From positions 67,508 to 129,398 of the forward strand of contig NW_004797723.1 in assembly GCF_000002075.1 (NCBI RefSeq): a stretch of 61,891 nucleotides of DNA, in the 5' to 3' direction. This document shows positions 1,674 through 47,502 of this stretch, piece after piece. This DNA is from Aplysia californica (Eukaryota). The notes beneath the pieces are model-generated. The model did no database searches, was not told the DNA's origin, and saw only the letters and a program-made list of their open reading frames with translations. The position numbers and the translations under genes are program-made. Every line of letters starts with the position of its first letter. Within the stretch, counting starts at the first letter, position 1.

Positions 1674-4600
1674 ATGACTAGCACAACAGAGGATTTTGAC
1701 ACAGACTCTGAAGCGGTGATGCTCCCTGAACCTCCCGAACGACCTTTGGACTCTGACTGCTGTGGGAATGGTTGCGTGCCTTGTGTGTTTGACATCTATG
1801 AAGAGGAAGTTGCTCTCTGGGAAGCTGAGTGCAAAAGATTGAGAACTGGCGGAAAAATATATGTTGAGAATAAGGAGGAACCACAGGTTGGTTGCTTTGT
1901 AGATTGATGAAAAGTATGGTCAAGTTTTTATGTTGTCAATGTATCATTTATAAAGAGGTGAGGGAGGGGAGTGGGGATATAGACATACTTCCCTCTCACC
2001 TTGGGTTCTTAAAAAACTTTAGGATAGTCACCCACTTTGTTGTAAATGTAATTTATAAACTTGTAAGACATATATGTGTATACAAAGCAGCAGCCTGTTC
2101 TTTTTGCTTTGTATAATCTGATATATATGATATGATTCGTTTTTTACATTACATTTTACAATTATAAGGTATCACTAGCATTTTGTCATTGAGAGTGGGA
2201 GAATTTGTATGATTTTCTGTTCATGATATTGTAAAAGTTCTTTCACTGTATTCTTTATGCTCTGTGTGTATCCTCTGTGTTCTAATATCTGGTATCTCAG
2301 TGTAAAACATTTAAATAGAAAAGAATCCTTCTGCTTACCGTTTGTATTGGATTAATACTGCACTCCTTGAAATACTGTAGTTCTTTTTTAGTATACTACA
2401 TGTGGCTGTCTGCATAATGAGAAATACAATGAGTGTCAGTTTCATGGTGGCTTGAATAATACTAACAATGTCATTGATTATGCTTCAAAGGTTTCAGCCT
2501 TGCAACAGAAATTCCTTTATTGGAAAATGTTCTGTTTGTATATTGACATCGTTTTTCTATTATGACACAATGTAGATGTTTCACAATAACAACTTCTTCC
2601 TCTCAGCCTCAATCTAGAAAGTGCCATTGTAACAAGGAACTTAAACAAGACTTCAGTTTTCTGCTAAATGAAAACGGACTGAAGGACCAGAGCCCAAGAC
2701 TGTGGAATTAAGGAATTTATAATGGCAATGACTGAAAGATAGCATTGTTATAATGATGCTAGATTTTGACATTTGAGGAGGCTTCTCACTCAAGCGAAAA
2801 AGTGCAATCCCTGTGCTGCATGTGTATCATTGGAAAGATGAAAATTTGTCTGGGGTTTGTTTTGTTTTCTTGTTATACAGGCATCACCACTCATGCCGGA
2901 CCAGTACAATCATTATGGTATTGAGAGTATCTCTCAAGAGACATGTGATGCTGTCAGGATAAGATGTACCCTGTCACCTCAACAAAAACTTGGTTTGAGC
3001 ATGGGTCAGCACATTATTATCAGGTAAAGGTCACAGTAGTAACTATTTTTGTGTGGGTGGTTGATGGGTGCTCTGGTATGGTTTGCTTCTTCTTTCCTGT
3101 CAAATATATGTCGTCCTTATAGAGATCTCCCCTCCTTCTTTTTTATGTTTGTTACTCTCTTGTAACACCTCTGATCTTCTGGCACTCATATGACCTTATG
3201 CAGTTGCGAGCGCCATAAAACCTCTACTAAAACAAAACAAAAACTATTTTTGTACGGTCATGGCAGTTTTCTTGTTTTTGGCTTGTTGGAATATAATGAC
3301 CTGCTTGGCCACCTTTGGAGGGGGCTGTGCCTCTTGCTCCTGTTCTTTTGCTGTGAGTCTATTGTATACTCACCCTTAAGACGACTGATTCTTTTTTAAT
3401 GAGGTCCCCAAGTATACCCCCCATAATATATGCCGTGCGCAATATACAGCCAAGATCGGGCCCAGCAATGGAGAAGTAATGTCAAATAGGATTTTTCATT
3501 GAACAATTACTGATATTTTGCACTTTTGACTGCTTTTGGGTAGTTTTCCCTTTACTACAACTACCAGCTTTTCAAGTTTTGTAAGTCAGTCTAAAGAGGA
3601 AGAGAGAAGGGCACAAGGCCGGCTTTAAGCCAGTGTATACTTGATTTTATCCATGTTGAGCCTACTCCAACATGGCAGAAATTCACCACCTATTTAATGC
3701 GCGACCAACAGAAAAAAGCAGTTTTTTTAGTCAAAGTATATCCCGTATTATAAGGTTGTGTTATAGGCGAATATATGGCAATTTTGGCCTCTGAGGGAAG
3801 GGGTGAGTGAGATAACTGCTTATACTTATATATTTTCTTTTATTTTTTTTCATATGACGTACTGTGTTAAATCACATTAAGTGCATTGATGTAAAATGGT
3901 TCAAATGGTCAAAGAGAGACAGTTTTTGGCGGGGTGACCACTGTACTTTGATTTTATCTTTGAGCAAGATGTCTTAACACCTCTAGGATATATTGTATTT
4001 TGATGTTAGGATTTGGCCTTGTGATGTCCTACCTCTAGTAAATATAAATGTTGCTCTTCCCTTTGGGTGAGTGGCATCGGTGGCCTAGTGGTTAGGTTGC
4101 CAGACCTGTAATCGTCAGATTGCAGGTTCAGGGGTCCGAGCGTCAGCTCAGTAAGGTTGTTGTGTCTTTGGAGAAACACTTTACATGAATTTCCCATTTT
4201 GTTCGGTCCTTTCGGAGAAGGACATTTGACTCAGAGGTCTCGCCTCTTAAATAATCTAATAGTTTTGATAGGGGCATTAAAACTTTAGATAGATACATGT
4301 ACCATTTTCACCTTTTGGTGAGAAATCATGGTTGTCTGCTACTCTTTACTATTTATTAATTAATATTTATAATAAAATAATAATAGCATTTGTATAGCGC
4401 ATATCCCGGCTCGACAGCAAGCTCTATGTGCTTTACACACTAGCAATACATAACACCTGTTGACTGGTGCTGGGGAAGATGGGGAGTGTGCCCTCCTCTC
4501 ATCATTGTCAATATTTCTCACTCCATGCTGGCATAGGCCACCAACAAGAGCTCTCCTTATATTTATGTCCTGTGCTGTTGTCCCATTTCTGTCCCATCTC

Positions 4601-7600
4601 TTTTGCTTTTTTGATAGTTTATAGTTTTCTTACTATGTGCAGATGTCAAAAGCCTGATGGACCTATGATCACAAGACAGTACACACCAATCTCTCCCGTT
4701 GACACAAAAGGATTTTTTGAGCTAGCCATCAAGGTGAGAAATAAAACTGACTTTAATCAGGCTTGGTACTTCGGAGAAAATATAATATGGACTGTGCTTT
4801 GTGGACTTTGTGGCTTATACTATAGGAGTCTTTGTAAATTTTTGTATGTTTTGTGTGGTACAATTGTTCAAAAATTCTTGAAAAAGTTGTATGAGGACAA
4901 ATTCTCATTTCAAAATTGACAGAACTTTCAACTGCATCTCATGAAAACTCTTTGTGGGCTTGTGTATCAAATAAAATGTTTATGCCCCTAGCAACCATAT
5001 CTGTTATCTATGGCAAAAACTATTGAACAAATCGTTTCATTGACTGTCATTGTATGAGGGAATTTGGCTAAAAATAACTGTTTTTGTGAGAATAGTTTCC
5101 TTCAAATGCCACTACTGTAATGCTTTTTCTCCAAGATTTGATTCCAGCCAATATGCAGTTACGTCACTCTGCCTTTTGAGAGCAAAACAGTTCCCACCTG
5201 TGTCACACCAAGGCCAAAGGTCAATCAAAGTGTATCAAGGCCGAAGGTCAATCAAAGTGTGTTAAAAAAGAATTTTGTCATTTTTACAGATTTACACAGA
5301 AGGTCAAATGTCTCAGCTTGTGAAAAACTGGAAGGTTGGGGAAAGGCTGGAGGCAAGAGGACCTATTGGACACTTGTCATATTCTCGGAACAAAGTAAGC
5401 TATGTTTTCTTTTCCATACTGAGTAGGCTACTTCTTTACTTTCTTGCTGTTTTTGTCCTCAAATACCTTGAGGTGTCAAGGGGAGATGCAATTGTTGGAC
5501 ATGGGCCAGGTGTGTTGCTGTTTGGATGGTCATGTTGTCCGTTTTCGTACAGAGTAAAGAAAGTTTTCAGGCTTATGGAAGAAACATCCTGATTTTGGAG
5601 AGAAAAAAATGGTTTCATAATAATCATAGACCATAATCACAGAATGAAGAGAGTTTGAATTTTGATAGTTGAGGGCACTTTCCAAATCTACCATCTCAAA
5701 CCTCTCAGTGTTTTGGATAGTATTCTTATTTAAACTATTTGTACTGACTAGAGTTTCTTCACTTTTGTGTAGTGGTTGTTTAAAATTTTTTCAGGTTGGC
5801 AGTGAGAACAGGCCAGCATTTTTAATTAGATTTTTCAACTGTGAATGTGTCATGTTAATACTCGCAGCTTGTACATTGTCCCTTTGAAATTTTATTAAAC
5901 TCTTGTCACTCAGAGAGAATTTTCCTTGACAGTGGGTGTTTGGCGGGGGCTGTGCTGTGATTTGCTTGCTCCTTCTTTCCTATCAAACGTCTATCGTTTT
6001 TACCTCTCTCTTTTTTGTGTTTGTTACTCTCTTGATACACTTCTACTAATCTTCTGCACTTATATGACCGAAGTGTGTTGCAAGTGTTGTAAACTCAGAC
6101 AAACAAAAACAAAACTTCCTTGCCTTTGTGTTGGGGATGTGGAAACACCTAAGTGAAGTTACCCTACATTGCTGGCTTACTATGCGCACATAAACCAGTA
6201 ATCAGTCTTGGAGACAAGCAGCCTACAGCATCATCATGTATCCTTTCAGTATAACCTGTTTAGGTGATGTCTGCTCCTTCTATTATTTTTAGTGTTACCA
6301 GTGTATTTTTTTGCTTTGTGGCAAAATGTGGTTATCTGGCAGACTTTCAATAGATAGTCTTTTAGTATATTTGTAATGAAGGTGTTGAAGGGGGACCACC
6401 TGTATTTGGTCAGCCCTACTTCTTTATTCTCCTTCTGTAATTTCTGCCTTGCTCATTCCCAGCTCTGAATGGTCGTTTACTCATGTGCTTCTCCGTCCTC
6501 AAAAAACTCCAACTCAGTGTTTGTACTAGTGGTGGGCGGTACCGGCGAAATCCAGTGTCGGTACTTTCTCGATTAAACTTTGCAAGCAGAATTTTAAAAA
6601 TAGTTACGGCCGCTAAAAAATGATTTCATTTTCAGAATCAGCGTATCAAAATAAGCAAAGTGGCTCACGTGGAACCTGATTTGAAGCCATATTATAAATT
6701 TAAGCAAACTTCGTTTTTGATTGTCAATTTTGAATCTGAAGTCCTGTATAAAGGTCACTCGCTGCGTTGTGTGCATCTGACATCACAGCTGCTAGGCCCA
6801 GGCCTACACACTGCACACTTCCCGTGGCCCGTTAAGAAAAAATCCCCTCTCGTAGGCTCCTTCTCAGAGCCAGTATTAACCGTTGGTGTCGGCTCCTTCC
6901 CGGAGCCGGTACTGGAGGCCAGATGTCGGTACTGACACCTCCTTCGGTAGAACCGGGAGTTCCGGTACTGGGTACCGGTACCTGCCCATCCCTAGTTTGT
7001 ACGACTCAACTGATCTCCTCTTTCACCATAAGATTGTTAGAAAAAAAAACACGTCCTTATTACCATGCTCTATTTCTTTATCCTCAGTTTAGTCGGATCC
7101 TCATGCTGTGTGCCGGAACAGGAGTAGCCCCCATGTGTCAGGTGATCAGCTCTGTGCTCTCGGACGAATTGGAAGACACCTACCTCAGACTGGTATACGC
7201 ATGCCGCTCGTATAAACAACTCCTTGCGAAGATGGAAATTGACGAGTGGCGAAGGTTCTGGAATTTCTCTACCATCTTTGTATTGAGTCAGGTTGGTAAC
7301 GCTAAATATTTTTGCAAGCCCCCATTGACACCATTTTTGATCACCTAGGAGGCAGGCTTTCGACATTGTCTGTCATGGCCAACTCGGGCTGAGAGGAATA
7401 CAATATCCAAACAGAAAGACCAAAATGCTCATCAACAAATTTATTCTCTCTCAGGAATCGAACTCGTGTGTCCTGCGTATGAAAAGGAAGTGCTGAACCA
7501 TCACACCTGATGCCAGTTCGTCCTTACCTTGTGTTTCGATTTTGTTTGTGATGGGGATGGGGTAGTGGATGAATCATGGTTCTCCAGCTCTTTTTGCTTC

Positions 7601-33010: not shown

Positions 33011-34093
33011 CACAACAAAGATTATTAAGTCACTTCAGAAACCATCAAATCAACTTGCAAAAGCCTAAAACGAGAACAAGTCAGATCAAACTCCGAGATC
33101 CAGTTTAACTGTTATATTTGATTTTGCAAGATCATGCCACAGACAAATCTATGTCAAATGTACCGGGAAGCAAAAATAATTTATTCCAAAAAAACTTTTG
33201 GGGAAATGTTTCTCTTACTCTTACAACAGTAGAACAAATCTGCACCTCCAGCGCGTTTGGTTCAAAGACATGTTCAGCTTTAACTTAAACAGTCACCACA
33301 ATGTTACCTCATGTCAAAGTATCGAGGTACTTGTCAGAAAAAAACTATATCAGTCAACTATCCGATTCGTTTACCAAATCATCACACAGAAACCTACTCA
33401 AAAGGAAATCCTGGAACAGTTGCACTTGCTTTTGCCTACATTGTAAAAGTTTCTAAGGCAATTCTGACATAATCTTAAACAGGTAGTACATGCCTCCAAA
33501 ATAACCATTATTGTGTTGAAATAGGGGCATAAATAAGACTCAATTCAGGTTGAATACAGAAAGCATTGGTATGGGTGCCGCTACTCACAAAGTGAACTTG
33601 GCTGCCACTGAATTGATCAAAACAACAACCATGAACAAAATTAAAAAAGAAGGAGAAATTGTAGTTGTGAACAATTTATTATTAAAAGCAACAACAGAAT
33701 CCTCAATCAAGAGGACTTCGTCACAAGAAGTCACATTCAAAGTTAAAAAAAATAAAATCAAGCACCAAATTAGGACGTGTCAGGTTTACAACTTTACTTT
33801 TAATAAACAAAATAAAACATGCAAGTACCTCCCTCACTCTTGGGTGCCTCCCACTTAAAATATATCTGTCTGCAAGAAATGATGATGAAAACCTGTGAGT
33901 CCGATTTCTTAAAAGTAAAAGGGTACCATGCTAAAAAAAAACATGTTTTCAATAAATCTAAAAGAGAGGTAGGCCTACTACTATTTGTCCAGGGAGAAAT
34001 TTTCCTTTAGATGAGCAGTAAACCCTGAATTCACACAACCTAATTTGGCACTTTACAATGAAACACATTCACTCCCTTCCTAATTGACACACC

Positions 34094-34610
34094 ATCTGCT
34101 TCTCGTGAACATACATAGAAAATGTATTTACAACAATTGATTTTTTCCCCCAGTTTTGTGCCATTAAAATGGTAACAAAATGACACTGAATGTTTCAACA
34201 GAAAAAATTTTGGTGACTGTATCTGTTCTTACAGCCAAACCAAAAAAATCGCTTCTTTTCCGTGGACCAAAAGTGTAGTATCGGGCCCTAAACCAGAACA
34301 TGACTAAAGACCAAATGTGCAGTACCCTCATTCTTGTGTGTAGTATCCGAGCTTATGAAAAGCATTATTCAAAATGCTAGGCAAAATTTATGCCTTACAG
34401 TGTAGCATCTGAACCTTCGAATGAAGTACCTGAACTTATCAGCACAAATAAACAAACTGATACATGGCCTCAATAGCAAAGTTGAGAGGTCTCGCATTAG
34501 AGCCGATTACTGCAGTCCCACACTGAAAAACAAAATAAGATTGTCTGTGACTTAAGTGTAAAATCAGAACGACAGTGCGTCGCTTATGTCTACAGTCTTG
34601 AATACTTACC
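34094..34610 (-). promoter_or_regulatory. Putative SNRPA1 3'-UTR element: U1 snRNA-complementary site plus array of U2 snRNA-complementary sites
   Basis: The + strand matches U2 snRNA, so the mRNA is antisense to it. Matches: GTATCTGTTCTTA 34219-34231, ATCGCTTCT 34248-34256, AAGTGTAGTATC 34271-34282, GTGTAGTATC 34338-34347, AGTGTAGcATCTG 34399-34411, AGTAcCTGaaCTTATCAG 34425-34442, GCTTCTCG 34098-34105. ATACTTACC (U1 nt 1-9) is at 34602-34610. The function is inferred. Confidence 0.7.
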
Positions 34611-34841
34611 AAGTCAAAGTCAGACTGTTCGATAAATTGTATAAAATGAAACCATGAAGATATTGCATTAATCTTAACCATGAACTTAAAAGCCATCAGA
34701 TTCAGTGAGAGCACTATTAATTGAAATGGGAAAACCAAAATCACTTTAAAAAACAATCATTTGTTCTCAAGACACGAATGAAATTTTTTACGTTTCATTT
34801 CTAAGAGATGACACTTTTTTTTTTACTCATTACAAAAATTA

Positions 34842-37800
34842 CTAGTCCTCTTCCATATCATCATTGTCATCATTGTCATCATCATCATCATTATCTTCTT
34901 CCTGATAACCAGATGCCTGATTGCCTTCATCTTCATCTTCGTCCCCTCCTTCTGGCTCCATTTCTTCTTCCTCTTCGGCCTGATTTCCTTCTTCTTCTTC
35001 TTCTTCTTCCTCCTCCTCCTCTTCTTCCTCTGCACTCTCTTTTGGCTCTGAAAAGACAAACAGCAAAGAGAAAACAATACATAAAACATGTTTCTCCTTT
35101 GAAGAAAAGTGGAATTGACACATCTCCCTATCACAACCGCTTGCAAAGACAAATTCTGCAGCGCACAATACACAGAGGAAGACATTAATGGTCATTTAGT
35201 GCAGGAAAAGAGTAAGACAAGACAGCAGACAGACAGAAACAAAAGATGGAACAAAACAAATAGGAATGCAGGAAGGGAGAAGCAAAGACAAGCAAAGAAG
35301 AGGTGGGAGGACAACATACCAGAGGGGGCAGGCCTGTATTTCAAATATATGGCCTTAAACTCCTTTTCATTTAAAAGTTAACATAACAAGACCTTTAAAA
35401 TCTGGAATGTCAGACAAACGTAATCATATAAAATATTTCAAACGCTGTGACTTTAAAAAAAACCCAAAACCAAGAGAATATCTGCTTTGAGTTGAGCTTA
35501 ATCAAGCCAGCACAATGAAAAAACCATTCTTGTTATGCTCTTACTAACGCTCTGCCAATTTGCATACATACTAAATCCTCAGTGATAGACAAAGTTAGGC
35601 AGAAANNNNNNNNNNNNNNNNNNNNNNNNNNNNNNNNNNNNNNNNNNNNNNNNNNNNNNNNNNNNNNNNNNNNNNNNNNNNNNNNNNNNNNNNNNNNNNN
35701 NNNNNACAACAACAACAACAAACAAACCTTGCCATGGGTGAAAAATACTACTTTCATAAGAGACGAATACAGTTCATTGTGTGTCATACAGTCATGTACT
35801 TACTTGACCCTCAGAGTCCTTGCAGATACCATAAGATCACCTACCGGTAATCCCAAGTCTTACAGAAGAGAATTGTGTTGCTTATGTTGCTCCCCGCATG
35901 AGAAACACCTCGTTTCAAATGCATTGAGAGTGGGCTCAAAATAAGCAGAAGTTTAGTGACACAAAACTCACCCACAGATACACAAACACACGCACATACA
36001 ACCAAACAAATAGAACTGGTTGGGTGATCACAGCACAAATATATTTCAGTATTTGGTTTTTCTCTTTGTTAACAATCCGTATGAAGATAAAAACAAAACA
36101 AAGCTGCCATTCCAGAGGGCAGTGAAGGAAGTTGTTTTCTCATAAAAGCCTAATGTGACTCAAGAGATAATGAGATTATTTCTCCTTTCGATAGTCTTAT
36201 CACAGGTGCACAGAATAAGTTTTATATTTTGCTTTGTACTTGTATACGCTCTTCCTTTTGTTTGTTCACTTTTAAGAAATGAAAAGTTGTGTAAATAGTA
36301 GCTCTATCATTGCCAGGGTCCAATGCCACAAAAGTACACATTCCAATTCAAATGAAACCTAGTGGGTAGGCCAACAATCATTATTCATGTTTGTATTAGG
36401 AAATAATTTGATCACAGAGGAGTCAACTACCATTACATAAAACAGAATTGCACGAGAAAAAGAAAGACAATCCATGAAAATGCTGGATAAAATTGAATCC
36501 AATGAAAAAGCGTCTGAAGTAAGTCACAAATATTAGACAATTGATTTTTAGGACCTGTCTTTTGAAGGACAAGAACTGCACACAACACTAAATACTGACA
36601 GACACAATTGATTTTGCTAATTTAGTAGTTCCCTGGCAAGTAGACTAATGCATACAAAACTAATCTTAATTCTTATTTCACTCTTAGAATTATTCATGTT
36701 GCCAACACAGAAATGCGGTTAACCTTTATAATGAAAATAAATGTAATAATAACACATTACCTGAACATAGTAAAGACAATGTGAAAGACGTACATCATCA
36801 ATTTTTTTAAAGTCGTGTACTGTATGCCAGAGTGTCCAATATTTGAAACACATGAACATATATGTGAATCTCATCTACAATTTCATACCATACCCAAAAA
36901 TCAATATACCACAAGTAAAGCAAACATCTAATAATAATTAAATAATAATAATAATAATAAAATAAAATAAAATGATACATTTTTCTCCTCAACCTACATA
37001 TATGCCAGTAAAACTTATAAGACCATTCAGTTTTGTTAAAAAGCATCATCAATGATACACTTAGTATGTATTCCTCACCTTTTGCCCCCGTTGATTTACT
37101 TGGAGCATCACCCTGCCCTGGAATCTGTCCTGACTGCAGCATTTGATGAATTTTCTCATACTCCTCCAAAGATTTTGCACCCAAAATAGCTTTCTGTAAC
37201 AACAACATTGCAAAAACGGTTTAGAAAAAGCATTTATTTTTCCATTCTCGAACAAAAGGCACAAATAAACACTTTCACAGAAGAACACCACAGTCTTTAC
37301 CACCTACGCAATTCTACTACGGAAAAACAAAGTATTCATTTCCTTGTACAGCGAAAACAAGATGAACAAAATTTTTGAAAATTGAGAATTTCAGCAAGAG
37401 CAGAAGAGCCCATATCTCTCAGTCGGCTCTCAAAATTGAATTTGTCCCCACACACTCCAGTGCGCGAAGAGGAAGCTCATCCATGCTTAATATATTCTGT
37501 TCACCTTTGGTCATACTGGAAACTGACTACTTTTGCGAAAATATGATTAAGAAAAATACCTTTTTAAAATTTTAAAAACAAAAAAGATGGTGCAGACGTT
37601 AGCTGTCTAAGATCCTTTTAAAAGTCTTTTTCTCATTCTTACATTTATGTCACAACCAGAACCAGACTTGTTCATCAACAATGGCTATATATTTATATAC
37701 ACATATGAGAATTACCCTGATTGCAGCTGCTTCCTGCTTCGTTGGACCAGTGGTTGCAACTCGTTGTGTCTGTAGATTTTCTCCTGGAGTGAAAGTTTTG

Positions 37801-40800
37801 GCCCCTTCATCACCGTTCTGAACATGTGCTGCTTGTGGTTGCTGCTGCGGCTGCTGCTGGACTTTCTTCTTCTTGTAAATTTTGGCTGCTGCTTCTCTTT
37901 CCTAGATTTTTTAAAAATTAAAAAAATTAAAGGGCAAAAAACTGCTTTGTCTTTCTAAAGTCATTAATCAGAGACTGGCAGAATTCTATACTTCATAATT
38001 ATGTGCATCTGGTATTGACTCACTATTCTCACAACCACAACTTTTCCAACAATACTGCTTTGTCAGCTGGCTAGTGACCTCACATTCTCTAAGCTTCATC
38101 ATATATTCTACTGACACAAGATAAAAGAAAAAAGACTTTTTTTTCCCCAACAGAAAAGAACAACCTTTGACTCCTTTGGGCAAGACTCCGTCATACCCAA
38201 CTTTTCAAAATGGCATATGGCAGAGTCTTACACTATCACTAAGCAGTCACGTTGATTTCAGTTATAAGCAACTATAAATAACTAACAAGATGCTCGTTCT
38301 ACTTGCAATAAAAAACATCTATTGTAGAGGGCAAGCTAAATAATTTTTTTTTCAAAACTGATATGCCAGACCATATTTTTGGTCAGTCCAGCAGCCCGTG
38401 AGTCTACACCATTTGGCCTCCATGTTATGCTTTAAAATGTGGAGAACCATCCACAGAAATATATACCTTTGGTCACATGCCTGGGTGGCCAATATCAGGT
38501 TTGAACATTTATTTAATTGTGTAGTTGGCATAAAAACTTCCTCTTATCATGTCAAACCCTTGGGATGAGCATGAAGTTGGCAGTGTAGCACGGTTCTAAT
38601 GACGTCCTCTGTTAAATCGTCCTGACAGCCCAATTTTAATGGAAATTATTCTACAGTATGATAGCGTTTTGAAAGTATCTTTTTGTTGGTGAAAAACATG
38701 CACCGGTATTTTCGGCTCAGAGTCTTTTTACTTTGTTTCAGTAAAGGTTTTACAGTGCTCGCAACTGCATAAGGTCATATGAGCGCCAAAAAGTGGGATG
38801 TCAACAAAGAAGTCCTTACGGGGAATCAGGCTTACTCTAGCTTCAACAGCACAAAATCTGCTTCGACTATCAAGGCACCCCGGAAATAGCGGGTCACAAG
38901 AGTGTGACAAACATACAAAAGACGTAGAAGTCAAATGATGATAGTAAGGATAAGGAAAGAAAAAGCAGCAGTTCCCTGTTGCAGTTTAGGCAAATGGATC
39001 AGCCCATTTACAATTACAATTCTACTGTGTATAAGAACATGGTTAATGTCCTCCCTTTGGGAATGGCCTAAAGACACTTCAGACAGTAGCACCGCCCCAG
39101 GGGTGCTGAGAGTCTTTCTTTATCATGTCTTTCTCTCTCTTTCATTCACTCTTCATGTTGATTGTGAGCTTTTGCGTATTTGAACGTAAATGCGTGTTCA
39201 TTATCTTTTTCAAAATGGATCAAAGTATTCAAATACTTTTTAAACTAGTATTTGTCTTAGCCAAAAATGCATTTAAGCAAACCATTCAAAACAGTGTAAA
39301 GATAAAATCAGAAACAGACTAGACATATATACAGTACTCAATGTTAATTCAAACAGACAGGAACCTCTTGGCAGATCATCGATAGTTCATCCTAATAGCA
39401 GTATTATAGGAGGTAGTAGAAGAACTAAAAACATAAAAGAAGATATACCTTTAACTTCACCCTGGTGAAGTCTAACACTCTTAAGGTTGGGACCTTGTGA
39501 ATGACGTACAATCTGTAATTCTTTCGTGTAGTGACTGGGTTCCCCATTAAACTGAAAAGAAAGTAGCACTGATGAGATAAGCGACATAACTATGATATGA
39601 AACTACAACAATCAAAGCATCATAAAAGTGAAACTTATTTTGCATCTAAAAGGTCACAAAAGTCTGCAAGTGTTTGCACACCAATAATGTGCTCCAGGTT
39701 CCTATTACCTTTGCCCTTTAATTCTCATATCCAGCAAGTACACACTTGTTTTCAAAATTCTATTACACAGAGGTTTTCTTTCACAAAAGTTTTAAACTTT
39801 TAAATGTCCATTTTAGTGGATATTGTATCTATCTATACCAGCAAAGTAACTGCACCATACTGGCATAATTTTTTAAAGTATAGTATATGCAACTTTTTTA
39901 TTTTACAGAAGGGCCAAAAAATTGAATATTGATATCAAGAAAACAACAAACTCTTTGCAAATACCCCAAGTCAGTATTTTTAAGAATACAGTTTTGATAA
40001 TAACTTCCTTATTATTTTTAAAGCAAATGTTTTACTGGTAACAACATTCAGGTTTTTGGCTCACCCAATGAGGTTACAAATAGTAATAATTATAACCTCT
40101 TTGGGCTCTTCTGTAAATTTGTAAAAACTGCATGTATACTGTATTTTTTTTACATGACGGCAGCATAGGAGACCGGTGTTGCCAGACACAGGAGCCGATG
40201 TGGCAAGCATTGCATTCTGCATGCAGGGGTGAATGGACAATGCAGTACATAAATGTTTACTTATCCACAACATTATTGGTAAATATACATTAATTAACCC
40301 TGCCTTTACTCATGGAAAATGCTACCTAACCATGTTAGGAAAAGATCCCTGGTTCTATGAAGCCTGATTCGATGGCAGCCCAGTATGGGCCAGTTTCTGT
40401 TTTCCTTCAACTTATCTATAAGTTCCTTCTGGTATTTCCAGTTAGCAAATGGTAGAGGCACTCCAGGTAGATCGAGACAGTAAGTGGTCAATATTTCTTA
40501 TTACTTCAGGGACCCACCTCAAATACTTGAGCGTTGTTATTGTGCTGAGAGGATCTAAATCTGCCAATTCCTTCAGACCATTATTCGTCAAAATTAAGGT
40601 CTCCAGGCTGGGCAGATTTTCTTGAAGATCTTCCGAGATTCGACTACACAACAAAAAAGGTGGGATGAGAAAGGATAAAAACATATGCAATATTGAAACT
40701 GATATAAATTGATGAATTAAATATTCATGACATTATTTGAACATAAAGCATTTAACTGTAGACTGGAATGCATGCCAGTTACAAAAGAGTCTAGTAATTT

Positions 40801-43800
40801 TAAGAGCAGGTAATTTGTTTACACATACATACATCTGAACTTGCAACTCGACAACAAATGTATTTTAATGTTTCATTTCATAAAAACATTCTGGAGCTCT
40901 AAATACAATAAACTGAAAATCCTTTCAGCTAAAGTCAGTTGCATGTGACAACATTAATAATTAAGTATCTAAATCCAAGCATATTTTACTTCAAAAACTT
41001 GCAGTACAAAAAAGACAAAACATGGATAACAAACCAAGTTTCTAATTAATGACAAGCAAAAGAAATTCAGCCGCAACAGTTTTGCAATGTAGCTAAAGCA
41101 GCATCTTATTAAAAAACTACACAGTGTTACATTAAAATACAGGACTTACACAATTCTGTTGTTGCTAAGTAAGATGTGTTTCAAACGTTTCAGCAATGGA
41201 AATTTGTCTAGCTTTCTGACATCGTTGTCTGTGAAATCAATGGTGTCAAACTGGTCCTAGAAAACAAAAAGCAAAAAAATCCAATTCATAAAGTATCACT
41301 GTACAACTGCAGTGACAGGATGGTGGGTACATCTATGCAAATCAAGACCCCTCCCCCCCCCCTCAAAGAAAAAACAGCAAATGTTTTCAGGACAAATTCT
41401 GATCTCATTCATACGGACTTTTAACCACTTTTTGTCACCATGGGGAGTGTGTTCCTGTCCCTGTCAGAACTGATCTTCAGTTAAGCTAGTTGACTAGGAC
41501 GGTAGTCTAATCAGTCTCAGTGTCAGCGGACTCCCTTTCAGGTTCTGGCCCATTCATGACAAAAATTCAGACCCCAGAGTCCTCAATAGTGTCACCTTCC
41601 TCATCTTCTTCATCCTCATAATTTTTAACAACTTGCAAATCTGGGTCAAATCAAAAAGTGACATTTGCTGCCTTTTTTCCAGTCATTTCGGAGTTAACAT
41701 TTTGTGGTTATCTGCTTTCATCTGCAATACTAGATCTGTGTTTATCAATAGCTTGTAAACCTAGCAGTAGAGTAATACTAAGAAATTAAGTACCCATAAT
41801 ATGCACATTTTTCATTGTCAAATACAAATCCATGCTGTGCTTAGCTCAATCTCCGTACAGTACAGTATAGAAGAATAAGAGCCAGATAAGCCTATGTAAT
41901 ATTTTGTAGATGATTAGAAACATCCAATTTTGTTAACTTCCATGACGTCCATGGTTCATTGCATCTTTGTGATGTACCATTAAAACCTTAAAGCAAAGGA
42001 GTTAACTGTAATTTTAGTTTCAACCAATACTAAAAATTCAACTTGGCTTTATAAACTATGTATCAAAATAGATCACAATTGAACCCTTCAAGTGAAATAA
42101 AACCTTTTAATCTATTACCACAGTAGCTGAAATGCCTTTCTCACTGCAATTCAAACTAACATCCAAAGAGAAAGGAATTAATACAAGTACAAAAGAGGAA
42201 AAAGAACAACCAAAGGAGCACGTGCATAACAAGGAAAGTATTAGATTGGAACCCACAGGGTAAAAGATCAAGGGGAAGACCACGTGGAACCTGGAGAAGA
42301 GCCCCGGAAATGGATGTACAGAAAAGTGGGAAGACATGGAGTGACATCAAGCGACTAGCCCAGGATAGGGAAAGGTGGAATATATTTGTTCCAGGCCTCT
42401 ATCCTGATCCAGATTGAACCACTGAAACTAAGAATGTAGTAAGCTACATTTTATTGTTAAAAAACATCTCTCACAGATTAGTTCTTGATGCTGATACTAG
42501 TTCTTCAAACATTTTACAGTGTAACATGATTAACATAATATGAACACTACCATTCTACAATTAAGTATTCAGAGTATAAATCCCAGCTAAAATAAATACA
42601 CACAAGGTTACAAATTTACAGTCCTAAATTTTCTCACCAGAGTAGCGCCCAAGTTTTCAATCACTGGTATCCTGTACCCTGAAAGAAGATGAGGAAAGAG
42701 AATTAGACTAACTGATAAAGCTACAAAGTTTGTAAAACTGGCATCGTAGCATACATCATCAACACATAAAGAATATAGGCCTACATTACTAGACATAATA
42801 TAACATAAATTTGGAAACAGGTCTTGGTAAACGAATCATTTTGGTAATTGAAAAGAAGACAATACAGCACCAGTGAAAGTCAACATTTTACACCTTATAG
42901 GGGGTACCCATTAGCGCGATCGGGTCGGGTCCTTTTCTGGTGGTTTCAGTGCACACTACAACCCCGCCACGATTGTACCCTACGACTTGGAAGTTAAAGA
43001 AGAGAACCCTTTAACCTCAATGGCTTCCAGGGCTCCTTTTTGCAGTTCCCTGTTGCAGTGCTGTGACAGCTTGCAATCCCATAAACATGGGTTACACCGA
43101 TAACTTTTTATTATCTTCTCTAAGTAGATGGACTCCATTATTGTCAATTGTGGATAGTATTTTGCGTGGAAATGCCCCACCTTGACATTCGTAGTGTCAC
43201 CATGGACACAGGACTCAGCCTTGCTGTGATTGGCTGCGAACCACCCAATCATGCGACTCGCAGGCATGAAAACAAACGTGTTTGTTTTTAAAGGTCACCG
43301 ACCAAGCCGATCGGTTTGTGCCGCAGGCTAGCCCCGACTACTAAATCGACCTGACAAAACCTGATCGTGCTAGTGGGCACCCCCTAATAGACAATAGACC
43401 AGAGGTCATCAGACGATAGCCTGCTGGCCCAGATCCTGCCTGTGAGGTCGGTTATCTGACCCGCTGTCATGCCATCATGTAGGGAAAAAAAATTGCATAA
43501 AAATGGAGCAATGGATGCTACTACAGAATTAAACAGACATTACATTGCATGGATTTCCTTTTTGGAATTGCTGAGGCTGATTGTGGGATGGTGAATAGTG
43601 TAAAAACAGGAAGTAAATCGACACCAACTGGGGTGTGGGTTTGGCATTTCTCGTATGTCTATGCCTACAAACGCAGCATCGATAACAGCAGTCAGTGAGT
43701 TAATCATTCCATTGAACCCAGCGAATTGAATAAGATTTTACAGACTTCATTAGTTTTAGCTGATGTACCACACTCTTGCTGCTTTGTTAGAGAAAGATTT

Positions 43801-46800
43801 GTCCTCGTCAACTAGAGGTGATATGAAACTATTTTTATAAGTGTACTTCAACACCCTCGCTTTCCAACGGGTCCCATATGTACGTTCAGCGTAACGTGAG
43901 CCATGATCTCCAAGTCCCGTATTTCTGCCACTGAAGTATGTGTTCGTGTCAGTCTGCTTAAGTGTTTGTGTTCATGTGTGGCCTACTTCTAGAACCGTCT
44001 GTGTTGGTTCAAAACCGAAGTGTACTTCTCGTTTAAAACACATCAAGTTGGTAGCTCTAGATGTACTTCCAATGAAATTTGAACAAGTTGACCCATATAA
44101 ACATAAGGAATTCAAAAGGATAACCACGTAACAGCTTGATTTTTAACAAAATGACATTACCTGATAAAAAATAATCTGATAGTTTTGAAAACTATTGTAC
44201 AAGTAAAAGGAAAAAAAGAGAGCAAAACATTCGGAAATTGATGTTCCTTTCAAACCCCAGATCGTTGGTTACAACAATAGCATCTAAAAAAAGCTTTTAA
44301 ATTCGAATGGACATAATCACTCATAATGACTTTAATCGAGAGGTTATTCATGTATTGGCAAAACTTATAATTATAGAAAGTATAGGAAACTGTTGGAGAT
44401 AGTCATAATAACAGAGACGACGGCCTAGCCACGTGGCTTTCCAAGTTTCCAAGGATCACCCCCGACCGTAAATTCATGGACAACATCAGAATCATAGATC
44501 TCTACATTCAGAAAAACATTTCTTTTGTGATTCCTTGAAAAAGTACGTCATAAGTTCTTAGAGGGCAGCTGATTAGGCTTACTTGGCTAATCTTTCATTA
44601 TATAGAGGCCTGTCTAGTGTTTTACGGTACTTACGCGTGTCGCGCATCAGGCCTAGGTCTAACTAAACATTAAATGCAGTCACCCAAATACCAGTCAGAA
44701 ACCTCTCAAAGATACATTTCCAGTGACCAATAAAAAAACCCGTCAGATGACAAAAGTGTGCCTTTGAGCTGAGCATGCTTTTGTACAGCGTGCGTTTAGG
44801 CGAAGACTAATGTATATATCTGGCAACTTGGTAACACATGTGTCACTTTTACGACAGCTACAGAGTTGAAAGTTGGCAAGTATTTGCAAAAAGATAGGTA
44901 GATCCCCACTACGGAGCCCGATTTTTTAATTTATTCATTTCCTGAATTTAGAAAAATATATTGGACAGAAAGTTCCCATCTTTCTTTGGCCTTTGTGATT
45001 ATTCCACTGAGAAACGAAACAAATGTGCTTAGCTGTCCTTCACAGCATAAGTGCCAGAAGTGATATTCCGCTGGAAGTAGTGTCTCTCCGCCTAGGCTTT
45101 ACAACACAAAAAAAAAACACCTTCTTATACCACCTACCCCCCTTTTTCAAAAGAAAACAAAAACCCTTTTGAATAAGCCCTATTTTTCTCCTTGACAATG
45201 GCAATGCGAGGCCGTTTTACACAGGTTTGACTGTGTATACAATTGCGTACGTATAGCAAAATTTTCAAAATTTGAATTTCTGTGTACGCAATTGCGTGCG
45301 TAAGAGACTCAGCCACATGGAGCTTACGAGAGCACACTACACTGGCTTCTGATTGGCTAAAATATCAATGAAACGACATCACGAGGACGATAGCCTACAT
45401 TGGCTTCTGATTGTGATTGGCTAAAATGGACTACTAGGCCGCGAGTCATTTAGACTACATGTATCTATTTTAAAATGACTTGATTAACAAGGCACTAGAA
45501 CAATATATGTATGTCCTATAGTTGACACAGGGGGTAGAAACTAGTGAACTGCTGCAGTTTTTATCTGTACCGATCTTTGCCTGGCCTCTGCTCTAAAATA
45601 GAGATCACCAGAAGACACTCGCTCGCTCAATGGTGACCTAGATTTCCGACTACATTCCACTAGGCCTAAGGTCAAAGTAATATTTCACCAAATTTGGTAT
45701 GTGTACATACGTCACTATATACATTATACAGCCAATCAGAAGCCGGTGTAGTGTGCTCTCGTTAGATCCATGTGGCACAGCCAGGCTTTACAGTTAGACA
45801 CTGCCTCTGTGATTTTGAAGACGTCGGTGTGTTCCTTTTACAGTGTAGAAGCCTTTTCATGGGTTATTATTTTCTTATAGTGCTTTTTTGTGATGGTGCA
45901 AGGCGAAACCCAGATCTAGATCGTCTGTTTATGCGTTGTACTTGTTCCAGATCAAATGTAGGGGATAATCCGGTTTTGGCCCAAGCGATTACTATGGAGT
46001 ATTGGTTTTGGCTCCACCGAGCGTCTAAACGATTACTTTTCGAGTCTTTGCGCGGCGAGCGAGAGGGATGGCGCACAGCGAGAGAGAGAGGGGGAACACC
46101 GCGCTGTGTTGGGTGCTGGGTGCGTAGGGTCGACGATATGATAATTTACGTAATATAATATACTCCGGTTTTGGCCCCAGTTAGTAATGCCGAAGAAACA
46201 ATAATAACAAAGGCGAAGAGAGAACTTGGCCAAAACCGGAGTATAGTATATATGGGCCGCTCTTTACAATTCTCTGGGCCTAACCCCAATAAGTAATAAT
46301 TTTTAAAGCCCTTACTCGCTGCCAGACGACATGAGCAGCGACCACAACTTCCAATAGAGGTAAGTTTGTTAGATTTTTATGTATCAGCGAGCGAAGGTCT
46401 TTTTTACTTTTACATAAAATAATCTAGAAAACAATTATTATCAGGGGGCAAGCCCCCTGAAACCCCCTCAATTCTGACATTCTTAAATCATTATTTCGGG
46501 TACAGCCCCAATTCAATTGCTATTGTTTGTATTAGGCTATTAGTTCGTTGTTCATGCTTGCCCCCTTGCTCCTCTACTCTGGGTTTAGCCCCAATTCAAA
46601 TTCAATTGCCATCAGTTCATGATGTTTCACACTCAGCTGTTAGTAGATCTTTCTAGGCCCCACTGAAACTGAAAAATAGCAGACAGCGCCGCATTCGCCT
46701 CTCTCTTCCACTTCCAGTTCCCCAGTCCGGGTTTGGTCCCACTACTAAGCCCACTTGTGGACAGCGCAGCGTCGCATTCGTAAGATCTATCGATCGCCTT

Positions 46801-47502
46801 GAGCAGGCTGCAGGCGAAAGAACTGCAGACAGTCACCTCTCTCCCGAATAAGACATCGATACCGAGTATAAAAGTCAGTATCGATATTGGAGTACTCTTG
46901 GGCTCTTGGGGCCAAAACCGGATAAATCAAAATGTAGACCAGCTTCCGTTCACATACAGTGCGTGCCGTAGGCCTACTGATCCCACAATGACTTGCCGAT
47001 CGATGCTTTTGAGTCCCATCATCGAACGGGGTACCCAGCTAGAATAATAGTCTAGCATATAGATTTAGGTTAGGCCTAGATACGTGTCAAGATTGAAACA
47101 ACAAAAAAGGGAGAAGGAGTTTCGAAGAGGGCTGGCCGACAAACAACACAGAAAAGAGGGGATTTTTTTCATGCGGCATATGCACCCTAACCCTACTAAT
47201 TTTAACCCAAGGCACCCTATCCATAACCCTAACCCTAGTATAGTATAATCAATAAACCTTATCACGGTAAGTACCGGCCCTCTGCGGAACTCCTGCTAAA
47301 CAAAGTACAGCAGAAGCCGCCCAAAACTGAAAAACTAAAAGTTCAAGTCGCTGGTTATCGGTAATAGGTAATATAGAGTCAAGTACACATTTTACTGTCT
47401 GAACTGGGTCAAGTTCTCACCTCTCAGATCTAACTCCCAATCCCTAACAGGATTGTGCTTCTGGGCAGACATGTTGATCAGTTGCGCTGTAAGCCGCACC
47501 AT
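34842..47502 (-). CDS. SNRPA1: U2 small nuclear ribonucleoprotein A' (321 aa)
   Basis: Exons (-): 47502-47421, 42678-42638, 41256-41150, 40643-40518, 39551-39449, 37901-37716, 37193-37079, 35047-34842; total 966 nt, phase-consistent. MVRLTAQLI...NPVRDWELDLRGYRIPVIENLGATLDQFDTIDFTDNDVRKL, LRR-cap NYRLYVIHKVPTLRVLDF, AKTFTPG, SLEEYEKIHQMLQSGQIPG. Confidence 0.96.
42170..42410 (+). mobile_element. RTE-type LINE 3' remnant
   Basis: Encodes ..LDWNPQGKRSRGRPRGTWRR.. and KWEDME*HQATSPG*GKVE-like decayed C-terminal motifs. Confidence 0.7.
42898..43386. mobile_element. hAT-like MITE
   Basis: TIR TAGGGGGTACCCATTAGCGCGATC / GATCGTGCTAGTGGGCACCCCCTA; no clear TSD. Confidence 0.65.
45312..45776. mobile_element. 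MITE with about 48-bp TIRs
   Basis: GCCACATGGAGCTTACGAGAGCACACTACACTGGCTTCTGATTGGCT is mirrored by AGCCAATCAGAAGCCGGTGTAGTGTGCTCTCGTTAGATCCATGTGGC. Confidence 0.75.
45969..46922. mobile_element. Nested or compound TIR element with TCCGGTTTTGGCC termini
   Basis: TCCGGTTTTGGCC at about 45969 and 46164; GGCCAAAACCGGA at about 46227 and 46910. Confidence 0.55.

What the first reader, a model, noticed from the sequence alone, without database searches (positions are those of the whole stretch)
34094..34565. Array of U2 snRNA-complementary elements downstream of the U2A' (SNRPA1) stop: candidate U2 snRNP-sensing autoregulatory system
Seen: within about 470 nt, starting about 280 nt after the stop codon, the + strand repeatedly reproduces U2 snRNA 5'-region sequence (human numbering, recalled), so the minus-strand mRNA is antisense to it. 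Exact matches: nt36-48 at 34219-34231 (13/13), nt1-9 at 34248-34256, nt29-40 at 34271-34282 (12/12), nt31-40 at 34338-34347, nt4-11 at 34098-34105. Near matches: nt30-42 at 34399-34411 (12/13), nt35-52 at 34425-34442 (15/18), nt20-40 at 34303-34326 (gapped), nt29-40 at 34554-34565 (10/12). Most substitutions are T>C or G>A on +, which preserve pairing as G-U wobbles only if the mRNA pairs with U2. The flanks differ between copies, so this is not a simple tandem duplication. At 34248-34282 the match covers U2 nt1-9 and about nt25-40 but skips the stem-loop I hairpin. Established: snRNP protein genes use snRNP-binding feedback elements (USSE in SNRNP48/RNPC3, U1-70K/U1C cross-regulation, the U1A PIE). 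Inference: U2 snRNP binds the mRNA of its own subunit to control its processing or stability. I know of no described equivalent for U2A'.
Basis: partly seen in the sequence, partly recalled or inferred. Interest (0 to 1): 0.95.

Follow-up and report, generated by a model that had tools for sequence, protein, structure and literature searches.

The report
U2-snRNA-sensing module in U2A' mRNA tail
The mRNA of the splicing protein U2A' in sea hares and many other invertebrates carries, in its 3' tail, a conserved set of sites that can base-pair with U2 snRNA, including the very loop U2A' helps to cover, next to an unused intron; this looks like an undescribed feedback switch that matches U2A' supply to U2 snRNA, but no function has been tested.

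Summary
The array is real and conserved. The gene is Aplysia SNRPA1 (U2A'). RNA data place the array in its single-copy 1.18-kb 3' UTR, poly(A) at 33659-33661. It has five strong sites antisense to the genome's own U2 nt 29-54 (0.09 expected), plus weaker and 5'-end sites. Orthologous UTRs show arrays in six other gastropods and an annelid-like transcript, and 1-2 sites in a brachiopod, oyster, Priapulus and two unassigned animals. None were found in Pomacea or amphioxus. Totals: 44 sites on the mRNA strand, 2 on the reverse; transitions keep G-U pairing 39:7. New here: 0-45 nt after a conserved UTR 3' splice site lies an element antisense to U2 stem-loop IV, the U2B''/U2A' binding site (8 of 10 lineages). 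A GTAAGT donor sits 87-198 nt upstream in 6 of 10. Best model (0.45): U2 pairing, strongest when stem-loop IV is uncovered, keeps this UTR intron unspliced and the mRNA safe from NMD; surplus U2A' frees splicing and decay. Shown: sequence, transcription, conservation. Not shown: binding, splicing (no junction in 4 runs), sign of regulation. The scan noted the donor and branchless sites before, on this same stretch only. No prior description found.

The parts
34842..47502 (-). SNRPA1 (U2A') coding region, 8 exons; last coding exon 35047-34842 (acidic tail, TAG at 34844-34842)
   Evidence: Exon 41152-41256 hits U2A' chain 1a9n_A, E 4.5e-12. Exons match the Aplysia californica U2A' cluster (P0239/XP_035827423) at 94-100%.
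33661..34841 (-). 3' UTR, 1.18 kb, unspliced in steady-state contigs
   Evidence: Contigs span 33661-34860, 33908-34860 and 33790-34843 without joints in three runs
33659..33680 (-). AATAAA (33680-33675) and poly(A) site (33661-33659)
   Evidence: 30 raw reads with poly(A) tails; all reads there lie on the minus strand; signal seen
34604..34612 (-). Consensus U2-type 5' splice site TTG|GTAAGT, 232 nt after the stop; donor of a candidate 87-nt 3' UTR intron (34609-34523) or a U1 site
   Evidence: GTAAGT 87-198 nt upstream of the acceptor in 6 of 10 lineages, P about 1e-7 against a background rate. Use not observed.
34554..34565 (-). Weak U2-complementary site at the branch position of the candidate UTR intron
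   Evidence: 10/12 match, dG -14 kcal/mol; 32-43 nt upstream of the acceptor AG (sequence)
34523..34541 (-). Polypyrimidine tract plus CAG 3' splice site (exon resumes at 34522)
   Evidence: A similar acceptor precedes the array in 10 lineages (picked by eye). Database isoform P0239 joins into exactly this position.
34501..34519 (-). Element antisense to U2 stem-loop IV loop (nt 160-171, 12 bp, extendable to nt 153), the U2B''/U2A' binding site; starts at exon +4
   Evidence: dG -28.3. Longest stem with the whole U2 falls on SLIV loop nt 160-173 in 6 of 7 gastropods; oyster and Lingula pair with the SLIV 5' strand of the Rfam consensus.
34420..34443 (-). U2-antisense site, nt 31-54 (branch-recognition region plus stem IIa 5' strand)
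   Evidence: dG -28.8
34399..34418 (-). U2-antisense site, nt 31-50
   Evidence: dG -23.9
34338..34356 (-). U2-antisense site, nt 32-50
   Evidence: dG -23.0
34301..34328 (-). U2-antisense site, nt 17-43, two bulges
   Evidence: dG -30.8
34265..34296 (-). U2-antisense site, core nt 29-41 perfect
   Evidence: 13/13; dG -30.0
34248..34256 (-). Site antisense to the U2 5' end, nt 1-9, followed by a U tract
   Evidence: Same element type in Candidula, Elysia, L026, L041, Priapulus, L077.
34219..34239 (-). U2-antisense site, nt 37-49 perfect, extending into stem IIa
   Evidence: 13/13; dG -27.1
34094..34105 (-). Weak site antisense to U2 nt 4-11
   Evidence: 8/8; near chance level on its own
35048..37078 (-). 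Last coding intron, apparently retained in a sizeable minority of transcripts (possible regulated output)
   Evidence: Contig depth 312 versus 1393-2017 for exons and 8 for the previous intron (X8); 19 versus 44-54 (X1); 4 versus 13-26 (X5); silent control stretch 0. RefSeq isoform X1 (P0270) reads into this intron. Contig depth is a rough measure.

Best explanation
A conserved U2-snRNA-sensing feedback module in the SNRPA1 3' UTR. It has four parts in order: a GT-AG intron unit more than 180 nt past the stop, an anti-stem-loop-IV element just inside the next exon segment, several bulge-less sites complementary to U2 nt 29-54, and 5'-end sites. SHOWN: the parts, their transcription and conservation, the pairing signature, and that the steady-state mRNA keeps the UTR intron. 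INFERRED: U2 snRNA binds these sites multivalently. U2 whose stem-loop IV is not covered by U2B''/U2A' pairs over the exon start, and the bulge-less sites divert U2 into non-productive helices. The UTR intron then stays unspliced and the mRNA is translated. When U2A' saturates U2, the element is free, the intron is spliced, an exon-junction complex lands more than 55 nt past the stop, and NMD removes the mRNA. The mRNA would thus read how much U2 snRNA still lacks U2A'.
For: Strand asymmetry 44:2 and shuffled-decoy queries at most 0.35 sites per UTR on average. Wobble bias 39:7, P 0.0013. Positions opposite U2 A or C are almost invariant, 80 of 81. Coverage is focused on U2 nt 32-50. TACTAAC is absent from all arrays, so the sites lack the bulged branch A. 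The anti-SLIV element sits at a fixed position after the acceptor with two different sequence solutions: the loop in gastropods, the 5' stem in oyster and brachiopod. Oyster acceptor, anti-SLIV and core site are kept in two assemblies whose spacing from the stop differs by about 2.9 kb. Donor conserved in 6 of 10. Transcript contigs of Aplysia, L029 and L047 retain the UTR intron. Precedent for exonic U2 pairing repressing the upstream intron: IgM inhibitor (PMC3964906). [quoted passage not shown]
Against: No read or contig shows the 34609-34523 junction in four runs; this fits NMD, but equally an intron that is never used. No consensus donor in Elysia, L026 or Haliotis; no anti-SLIV element in L026 or L047. 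L041 has an array with no intron ahead of it in its contig. Acceptors were chosen by eye. U2 sequences of the other species were not available, so pairing was computed with Aplysia U2 or the Rfam consensus, and true covariation was not tested. The module was not found in Pomacea or Branchiostoma. The sign of regulation is not tested.
Confidence: 0.45

Rival explanations
1. Nuclear detention. U2 on the array plus U1 on the GTAAGT site build a dead-end spliceosome-like complex on the terminal exon, holding the transcript in the nucleus or delaying removal of the last coding intron when U2 snRNP is plentiful. The UTR intron is rarely excised.
For: The last coding intron appears retained in roughly 15-35% of transcripts versus under 1% for the previous intron in X8. 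U11 binding to the 65K long UTR causes retention (PMC5473595). 5' splice site motifs promote retention (PMC9074902 abstract). Mouse Snrpa1 shows retention of introns 5 and 6 (PMC5062968).
Against: Terminal introns are often partly retained in poly(A) RNA, and contig depth is rough. It does not by itself explain why the anti-SLIV element hugs the acceptor.
Confidence: 0.2
2. USSE-like enhancer. Mature 17S U2 snRNP on the exonic sites activates the upstream UTR acceptor (or its use as an alternative last exon), giving unproductive isoforms when total U2 snRNP is high. The SLIV element is secondary.
For: Same layout as USSE: unused snRNA sites downstream of a regulated 3' splice site. 27 of 39 aligned sites match U2 32-43, the register of the extended branch helix that 17S U2 forms by strand invasion. 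P0239 joins into the acceptor.
Against: Known exonic U2 pairing represses rather than activates. Twelve sites target nt 37-53 and need stem IIa opened, and the SLIV element needs the loop free (inference from U2 structure).
Confidence: 0.15
3. Cytoplasmic coupling. Newly exported, protein-poor U2 snRNA binds the UTR during snRNP biogenesis and stabilises or activates the mRNA, or receives nascent U2A' at the ribosome.
For: The targets (5' end, nt 29-54, SLIV) are all open only in protein-poor U2 (inference). In Aplysia the SLIV, core and 5'-end sites run in the antiparallel order that one U2 molecule could span. All poly(A) ends seen lie beyond the array.
Against: Does not explain the conserved donor and acceptor upstream.
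Confidence: 0.12
4. The UTR hosts guide RNAs (scaRNA/snoRNA-like) for modifying U2, whose modified region overlaps the targeted nucleotides.
For: The targeted U2 5' domain is heavily modified (own knowledge); many copies mismatch opposite U44/U45.
Against: No Rfam guide-RNA match over the array. No D box follows the sites and there is no bipartite H/ACA pocket layout (sequence inspection). The sites are exonic and vary in number and spacing.
Confidence: 0.04
5. Neutral relic of an antisense U2 retrocopy or minisatellite.
For: The genome has dozens of U2 fragments, and paired-decamer patterns occur in minisatellites at control frequency.
Against: Present in orthologous UTRs of several phyla with unrelated flanks; wobble bias; U2 nt 60-145 not represented; Rfam U2 score only 14.9 bits, E 6.4; single copy; no variants in 34024-34860 in three runs while the distal UTR varies. 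A retrocopy could still be the remote origin.
Confidence: 0.02

Closest known systems
[quoted passage not shown]
   Same: Tandem snRNA-complementary sites not used for catalysis, in the pre-mRNA of a protein of that snRNP, downstream of a 3' splice site; 3' UTR location in 65K; deep conservation; feedback logic.
   Different: Here the ligand is U2 and the sites mimic the branch helix without the bulged A rather than 5' splice sites. There are 3-7 sites in several registers, plus a site against the protein-binding stem-loop IV. Effect and sign are untested.
U1-70K/U1C intra-U1 snRNP cross-regulation (PMC3798272)
   Same: Major-spliceosome snRNP reads cis sites in its own subunit's pre-mRNA and switches productive to unproductive splicing.
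   Different: Uses cryptic 5' splice sites and U1C-dependent U1 binding. No equivalent described for U2A' in my searches.
IgM exon M2 splicing inhibitor (PMC3964906)
   Same: U2 snRNA pairs with a branch-point-like exonic sequence and the upstream intron is repressed.
   Different: Single PTB-dependent site in an unrelated gene; not a feedback sensor.
U1A PIE element (PMC9977717)
   Same: 3' UTR autoregulatory element of an snRNP protein tied to its snRNA binding site.
   Different: PIE copies the snRNA loop in sense and binds the protein. Here the element is complementary to the loop and would bind the RNA.
Vertebrate Snrpa1 non-productive splicing: introns 5/6 retention, exon 6 skipping (PMC5062968)
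   Same: The same gene is regulated by unproductive splicing.
   Different: Internal exon, no U2-antisense element reported. Vertebrate UTRs and introns were not tested here.

Membership tests
USSE | Tandem U12-type 5' splice sites binding U11 snRNA | tested here: not met
   Sites complement U2 nt 1-18, 29-56 and 148-173
USSE | Located in the gene of a protein of the sensed snRNP | tested here: met
   SNRPA1/U2A'
USSE | Sites not usable for catalysis, downstream of a 3' splice site | tested here: met
   No bulged-A TACTAAC in the arrays; an acceptor precedes the array in 10 lineages, chosen by eye
USSE | Evolutionary conservation | tested here: met
   Mollusca, Brachiopoda, annelid-like transcripts, weakly Priapulida
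USSE | snRNP binding activates the upstream 3' splice site and yields an unproductive isoform | not testable with these tools
   No junction in four runs; needs NMD-inhibited RNA and reporters
NMD-coupled 3' UTR intron | GT-AG intron more than 55 nt downstream of the stop | tested here: met
   34609-34523, 232 nt after the stop; donors 182-393 nt after the stop in Lingula, Physella, L047 and Candidula, further out in L029
NMD-coupled 3' UTR intron | Spliced junction detectable and rising on NMD inhibition | tested here: inconclusive
   Not seen in untreated RNA; no NMD-inhibited data
U2 snRNA pseudogene | Single collinear copy with neutral substitutions, lineage-restricted | tested here: not met
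   Repeated partial registers, wobble bias 39:7, cross-phylum conservation, Rfam 14.9 bits versus cut-off 46
U1A PIE-type protein-binding element | Sense copy of the AUUGCA(C/G) loop in a hairpin | tested here: inconclusive
   Gastropod motif reads ACUGCAR and fits the antisense better; oyster and Lingula are clearly antisense; L047 has a sense-like UUGCAGUC. The TGCA core is palindromic, so the readings partly overlap.
scaRNA/snoRNA guides for U2 | C/D or H/ACA boxes positioned on the antisense element | tested here: not met
   No Rfam match; boxes not seen beside the sites

The most novel reading that the evidence does not exclude
An mRNA that measures the protein occupancy of an snRNA. The U2A' transcript base-pairs with U2 stem-loop IV only when U2B''/U2A' is missing from it, and this pairing, helped by an array of branchless U2 sites, gates a 3' UTR intron and so the mRNA's survival. 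It would be an ancient protostome stoichiometry sensor for U2 snRNP assembly, distinct from known loops that sense the protein itself or the mature snRNP.
Probability: 0.4. Interest if true: 0.93.

Novelty: new variant of a known kind. Interest (0 to 1): 0.86.

Why it matters
How cells balance core U2 snRNP proteins against U2 snRNA is largely open; snRNA-read feedback elements are described for U11 and U1, and I found none for U2. This module gives a concrete, mutable element with exact compensatory predictions in U2. It suggests that long snRNA-mRNA pairing outside splice sites can be regulatory, and that an mRNA can sense an unoccupied protein-binding site on a non-coding RNA. It also gives a simple recipe for finding similar modules: scan snRNP-protein mRNAs for wobble-biased antisense to their snRNA.

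Tried and rejected
Rfam at gathering threshold found nothing in the window. Tandem Repeats Finder found nothing over the array. A G-U-permissive score was noisy in G/T-rich DNA and was replaced by stricter and transition-neutral scores. A second apparent array at G000:C1155 is minisatellite-like in repeat-rich DNA with no recognisable gene, and that pattern had fewer hits than its reversed control (8 versus 45), so it was rejected. Paired-decamer patterns do not single out SNRPA1 genome-wide (48 hits versus 107 control), so genome-wide uniqueness is not claimed. No exact 12-mer core site was listed on the contigs carrying SF3B1, SF3A3 or the two PSP-domain genes (3 of 103 hits unlisted; a weak negative). 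SNRPB2/SNF was not tested. Littorina look-up failed. Most of 80 metagenome loci had short UTRs or no sites. A coding explanation was judged unlikely: the 27-codon frame after the acceptor is seen only in the odd model P0239, its conservation was not tested, and most of the array lies past its stop. Operator limits kept: N stretches were not filled, the gap letters printed by the reads tool were not used, the gene was searched exon by exon with the joined step left out, and no human sequence was fetched, so vertebrates are untested.

Full report
Gene and organism. The minus-strand gene is SNRPA1 (U2A'). Exon 41152-41256 hits solved U2A' chains (E 4.5e-12), and the exons match a protein cluster annotated as Aplysia californica at 94-100%. 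The stop is at 34844-34842. I searched exon by exon and built no joined model.

Observation. The genome holds ten identical full U2 genes. With a score that treats all transitions alike, five sites lie in 34094-34565 on the mRNA strand against 0.09 expected (P 5e-8). None of 3000 dinucleotide shuffles reached five, and 371 background 1.2-kb windows had at most two. Predicted duplex energies are -23 to -31 kcal/mol for six sites. The segment is single-copy, is not a tandem repeat and scores far below the U2 family cut-off (14.9 versus 46 bits).

Transcription. Thirty raw reads carry poly(A) at 33659-33661, below an AATAAA at 33680-33675. Contigs from three runs cover the UTR without a joint. 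The array therefore lies in a 1.18-kb 3' UTR of the mature mRNA. No variant was seen in 34024-34860, while the distal UTR has several SNVs and indels; this is suggestive only. The last coding intron is covered at about 15-35% of exon depth, versus under 1% for the preceding intron in run X8, with zero depth on a silent control stretch. Contig depth is a rough measure.

Conservation. Orthologous 3' regions carry the same kind of sites with unrelated flanks. Three to six strong sites occur in Physella, Candidula, Elysia, Haliotis, two further gastropod transcripts (L026, L029; taxon inferred from protein) and an annelid-like transcript (L047). One or two strong sites, with weaker ones visible by eye, occur in Lingula, oyster, Priapulus, a second annelid-like transcript (L041) and a soil-animal transcript (L077). 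None passed in Pomacea or Branchiostoma. Over the 13 positive lineages there are 44 sites on the mRNA strand and 2 on the reverse. Transitions that keep a G-U pair with U2 outnumber those that break it 39 to 7 (63% expected, P 0.0013; lineages are not fully independent). Among 27 sites anchored on U2 32-43, positions opposite U2 A or C are conserved in 80 of 81 cells, while changes opposite U or G are mostly wobbles. There are three site classes: nt 32-43 (branch-helix register), nt 37-53 (reaching into stem IIa) and nt 1-18. The bulged-A form TACTAAC is absent from the arrays. Many heterobranch copies have U or C opposite U44/U45; these are pseudouridines in human U2 (own knowledge), which may explain the tolerance.

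Architecture not in the finding. Upstream of the array lies a pyrimidine tract and AG in ten lineages (34523 in Aplysia; picked by eye). In six of them a GTAAGT donor lies 87-198 nt further upstream, against a 3% chance per lineage (P about 1e-7). These units lie at least 180 nt past the stop, so splicing them would be expected to trigger NMD (established rule). Within 45 nt after the acceptor is an element complementary to U2 stem-loop IV. In six of seven gastropods the longest perfect stem between those 50 nt and the whole 192-nt U2 falls on loop nt 160-173; in Aplysia it is 12 bp starting at exon +4. Oyster and Lingula instead complement the 5' strand of the same stem: 13 and 8 consecutive Watson-Crick pairs with the Rfam consensus, z -7.2 and -5.7. 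Stem-loop IV is where U2B''/U2A' binds (PMC9977717; own knowledge of 1A9N). Two different sequence solutions aimed at the same hairpin from the same position argue for selection on pairing. Species-matched U2 genes were not available, so covariation is untested; L026 and L047 lack the element.

Mechanism. Shown: parts, order, transcription, conservation, pairing signature, and retention of the UTR intron in steady-state contigs of three species. Inferred: U2 binds multivalently. U2 with an uncovered stem-loop IV masks the exon start, while bulge-less sites trap U2 in non-productive helices, as at the IgM inhibitor (PMC3964906). The intron stays in and the mRNA is translated. With U2A' in excess the mask is lost, the intron is spliced and the mRNA decays. 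I give this 0.45. I put pairing with U2 in vivo at about 0.93 and some form of feedback at about 0.8. The main gap is that no spliced junction was seen in four untreated runs. An old database isoform (P0239) joins into exactly the predicted acceptor, but from a non-GT position, so it is weak support. Rivals are nuclear detention (0.2), a USSE-like enhancer (0.15), cytoplasmic coupling to nascent U2 (0.12), modification guides (0.04) and a neutral relic (0.02).

Comparison and novelty. It works like the USSE of SNRNP48/RNPC3 (PMC5473595) and the U1-70K/U1C switch (PMC3798272), but it is not a USSE: the snRNA and site type differ. Mouse Snrpa1 is known to undergo non-productive splicing at internal introns (PMC5062968), with no U2-antisense element reported there. 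Six literature searches aimed at this question found no description; the library lacks most subscription journals. The scan's own notes mention the donor and the branchless sites on this same stretch only. I had found both before reading them, and they are not independent evidence.

Verdict. A real, deeply conserved, apparently undescribed cis-module with a testable mechanism. New variant of snRNP-sensing feedback; categorically new if the stem-loop IV occupancy sensing holds (0.4). Interest 0.86.

Noticed in passing
window 35048-37078: The last coding intron of SNRPA1 is covered at about 15-35% of exon depth in three RNA assemblies, and RefSeq isoform X1 reads into it; possibly a detained intron tied to the module.
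   Followed up: partly
window 34522-34442 and P0239: An older database isoform joins the acidic exon to the UTR acceptor at 34522 from a position with no GT; origin unexplained.
   Followed up: partly
window 47502-47419 and alignment A1: Heterobranch U2A' has lineage-specific N-terminal changes (QLINMSAQKH, RDWE) and mostly lacks the GKKGQQL motif, plus a long acidic tail; possible co-evolution with U2 or SNF.
   Followed up: no
window 35334-35316: A CAG followed 14 nt later by a GTATGT donor inside the last intron could be a frame-shifting microexon; no joint seen in the four runs.
   Followed up: partly
L035:12162 and L040:9278: In oyster and Lingula the UTR acceptor AG is followed directly by GT (AG|GTAAAT, AG|GTACGC), like a recursive splice site.
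   Followed up: no
L025:25900-25985: Candidula has a second pair of U2-antisense sites (nt 37-54 and nt 4-18) about 2.3 kb after the stop.
   Followed up: partly
L018:1420-2050 (G000:C1155): Degenerate roughly 30-nt minisatellite containing GATACTACAC beside a dispersed repeat also present in SNRPA1 intron 5 (window near 38790); no gene recognised.
   Followed up: partly
G000:C516:519402-551251: Tandem array of U2 genes with about 3.08-kb spacing; further copies on C396 and C2468.
   Followed up: no
window 1674-7348 and 56685-56942: Exon fragments suggest a cytochrome b5 reductase-like (CYB5RL-type) gene on + and a Nudix hydrolase (DIPP-type) exon; read from ORF translations only.
   Followed up: no
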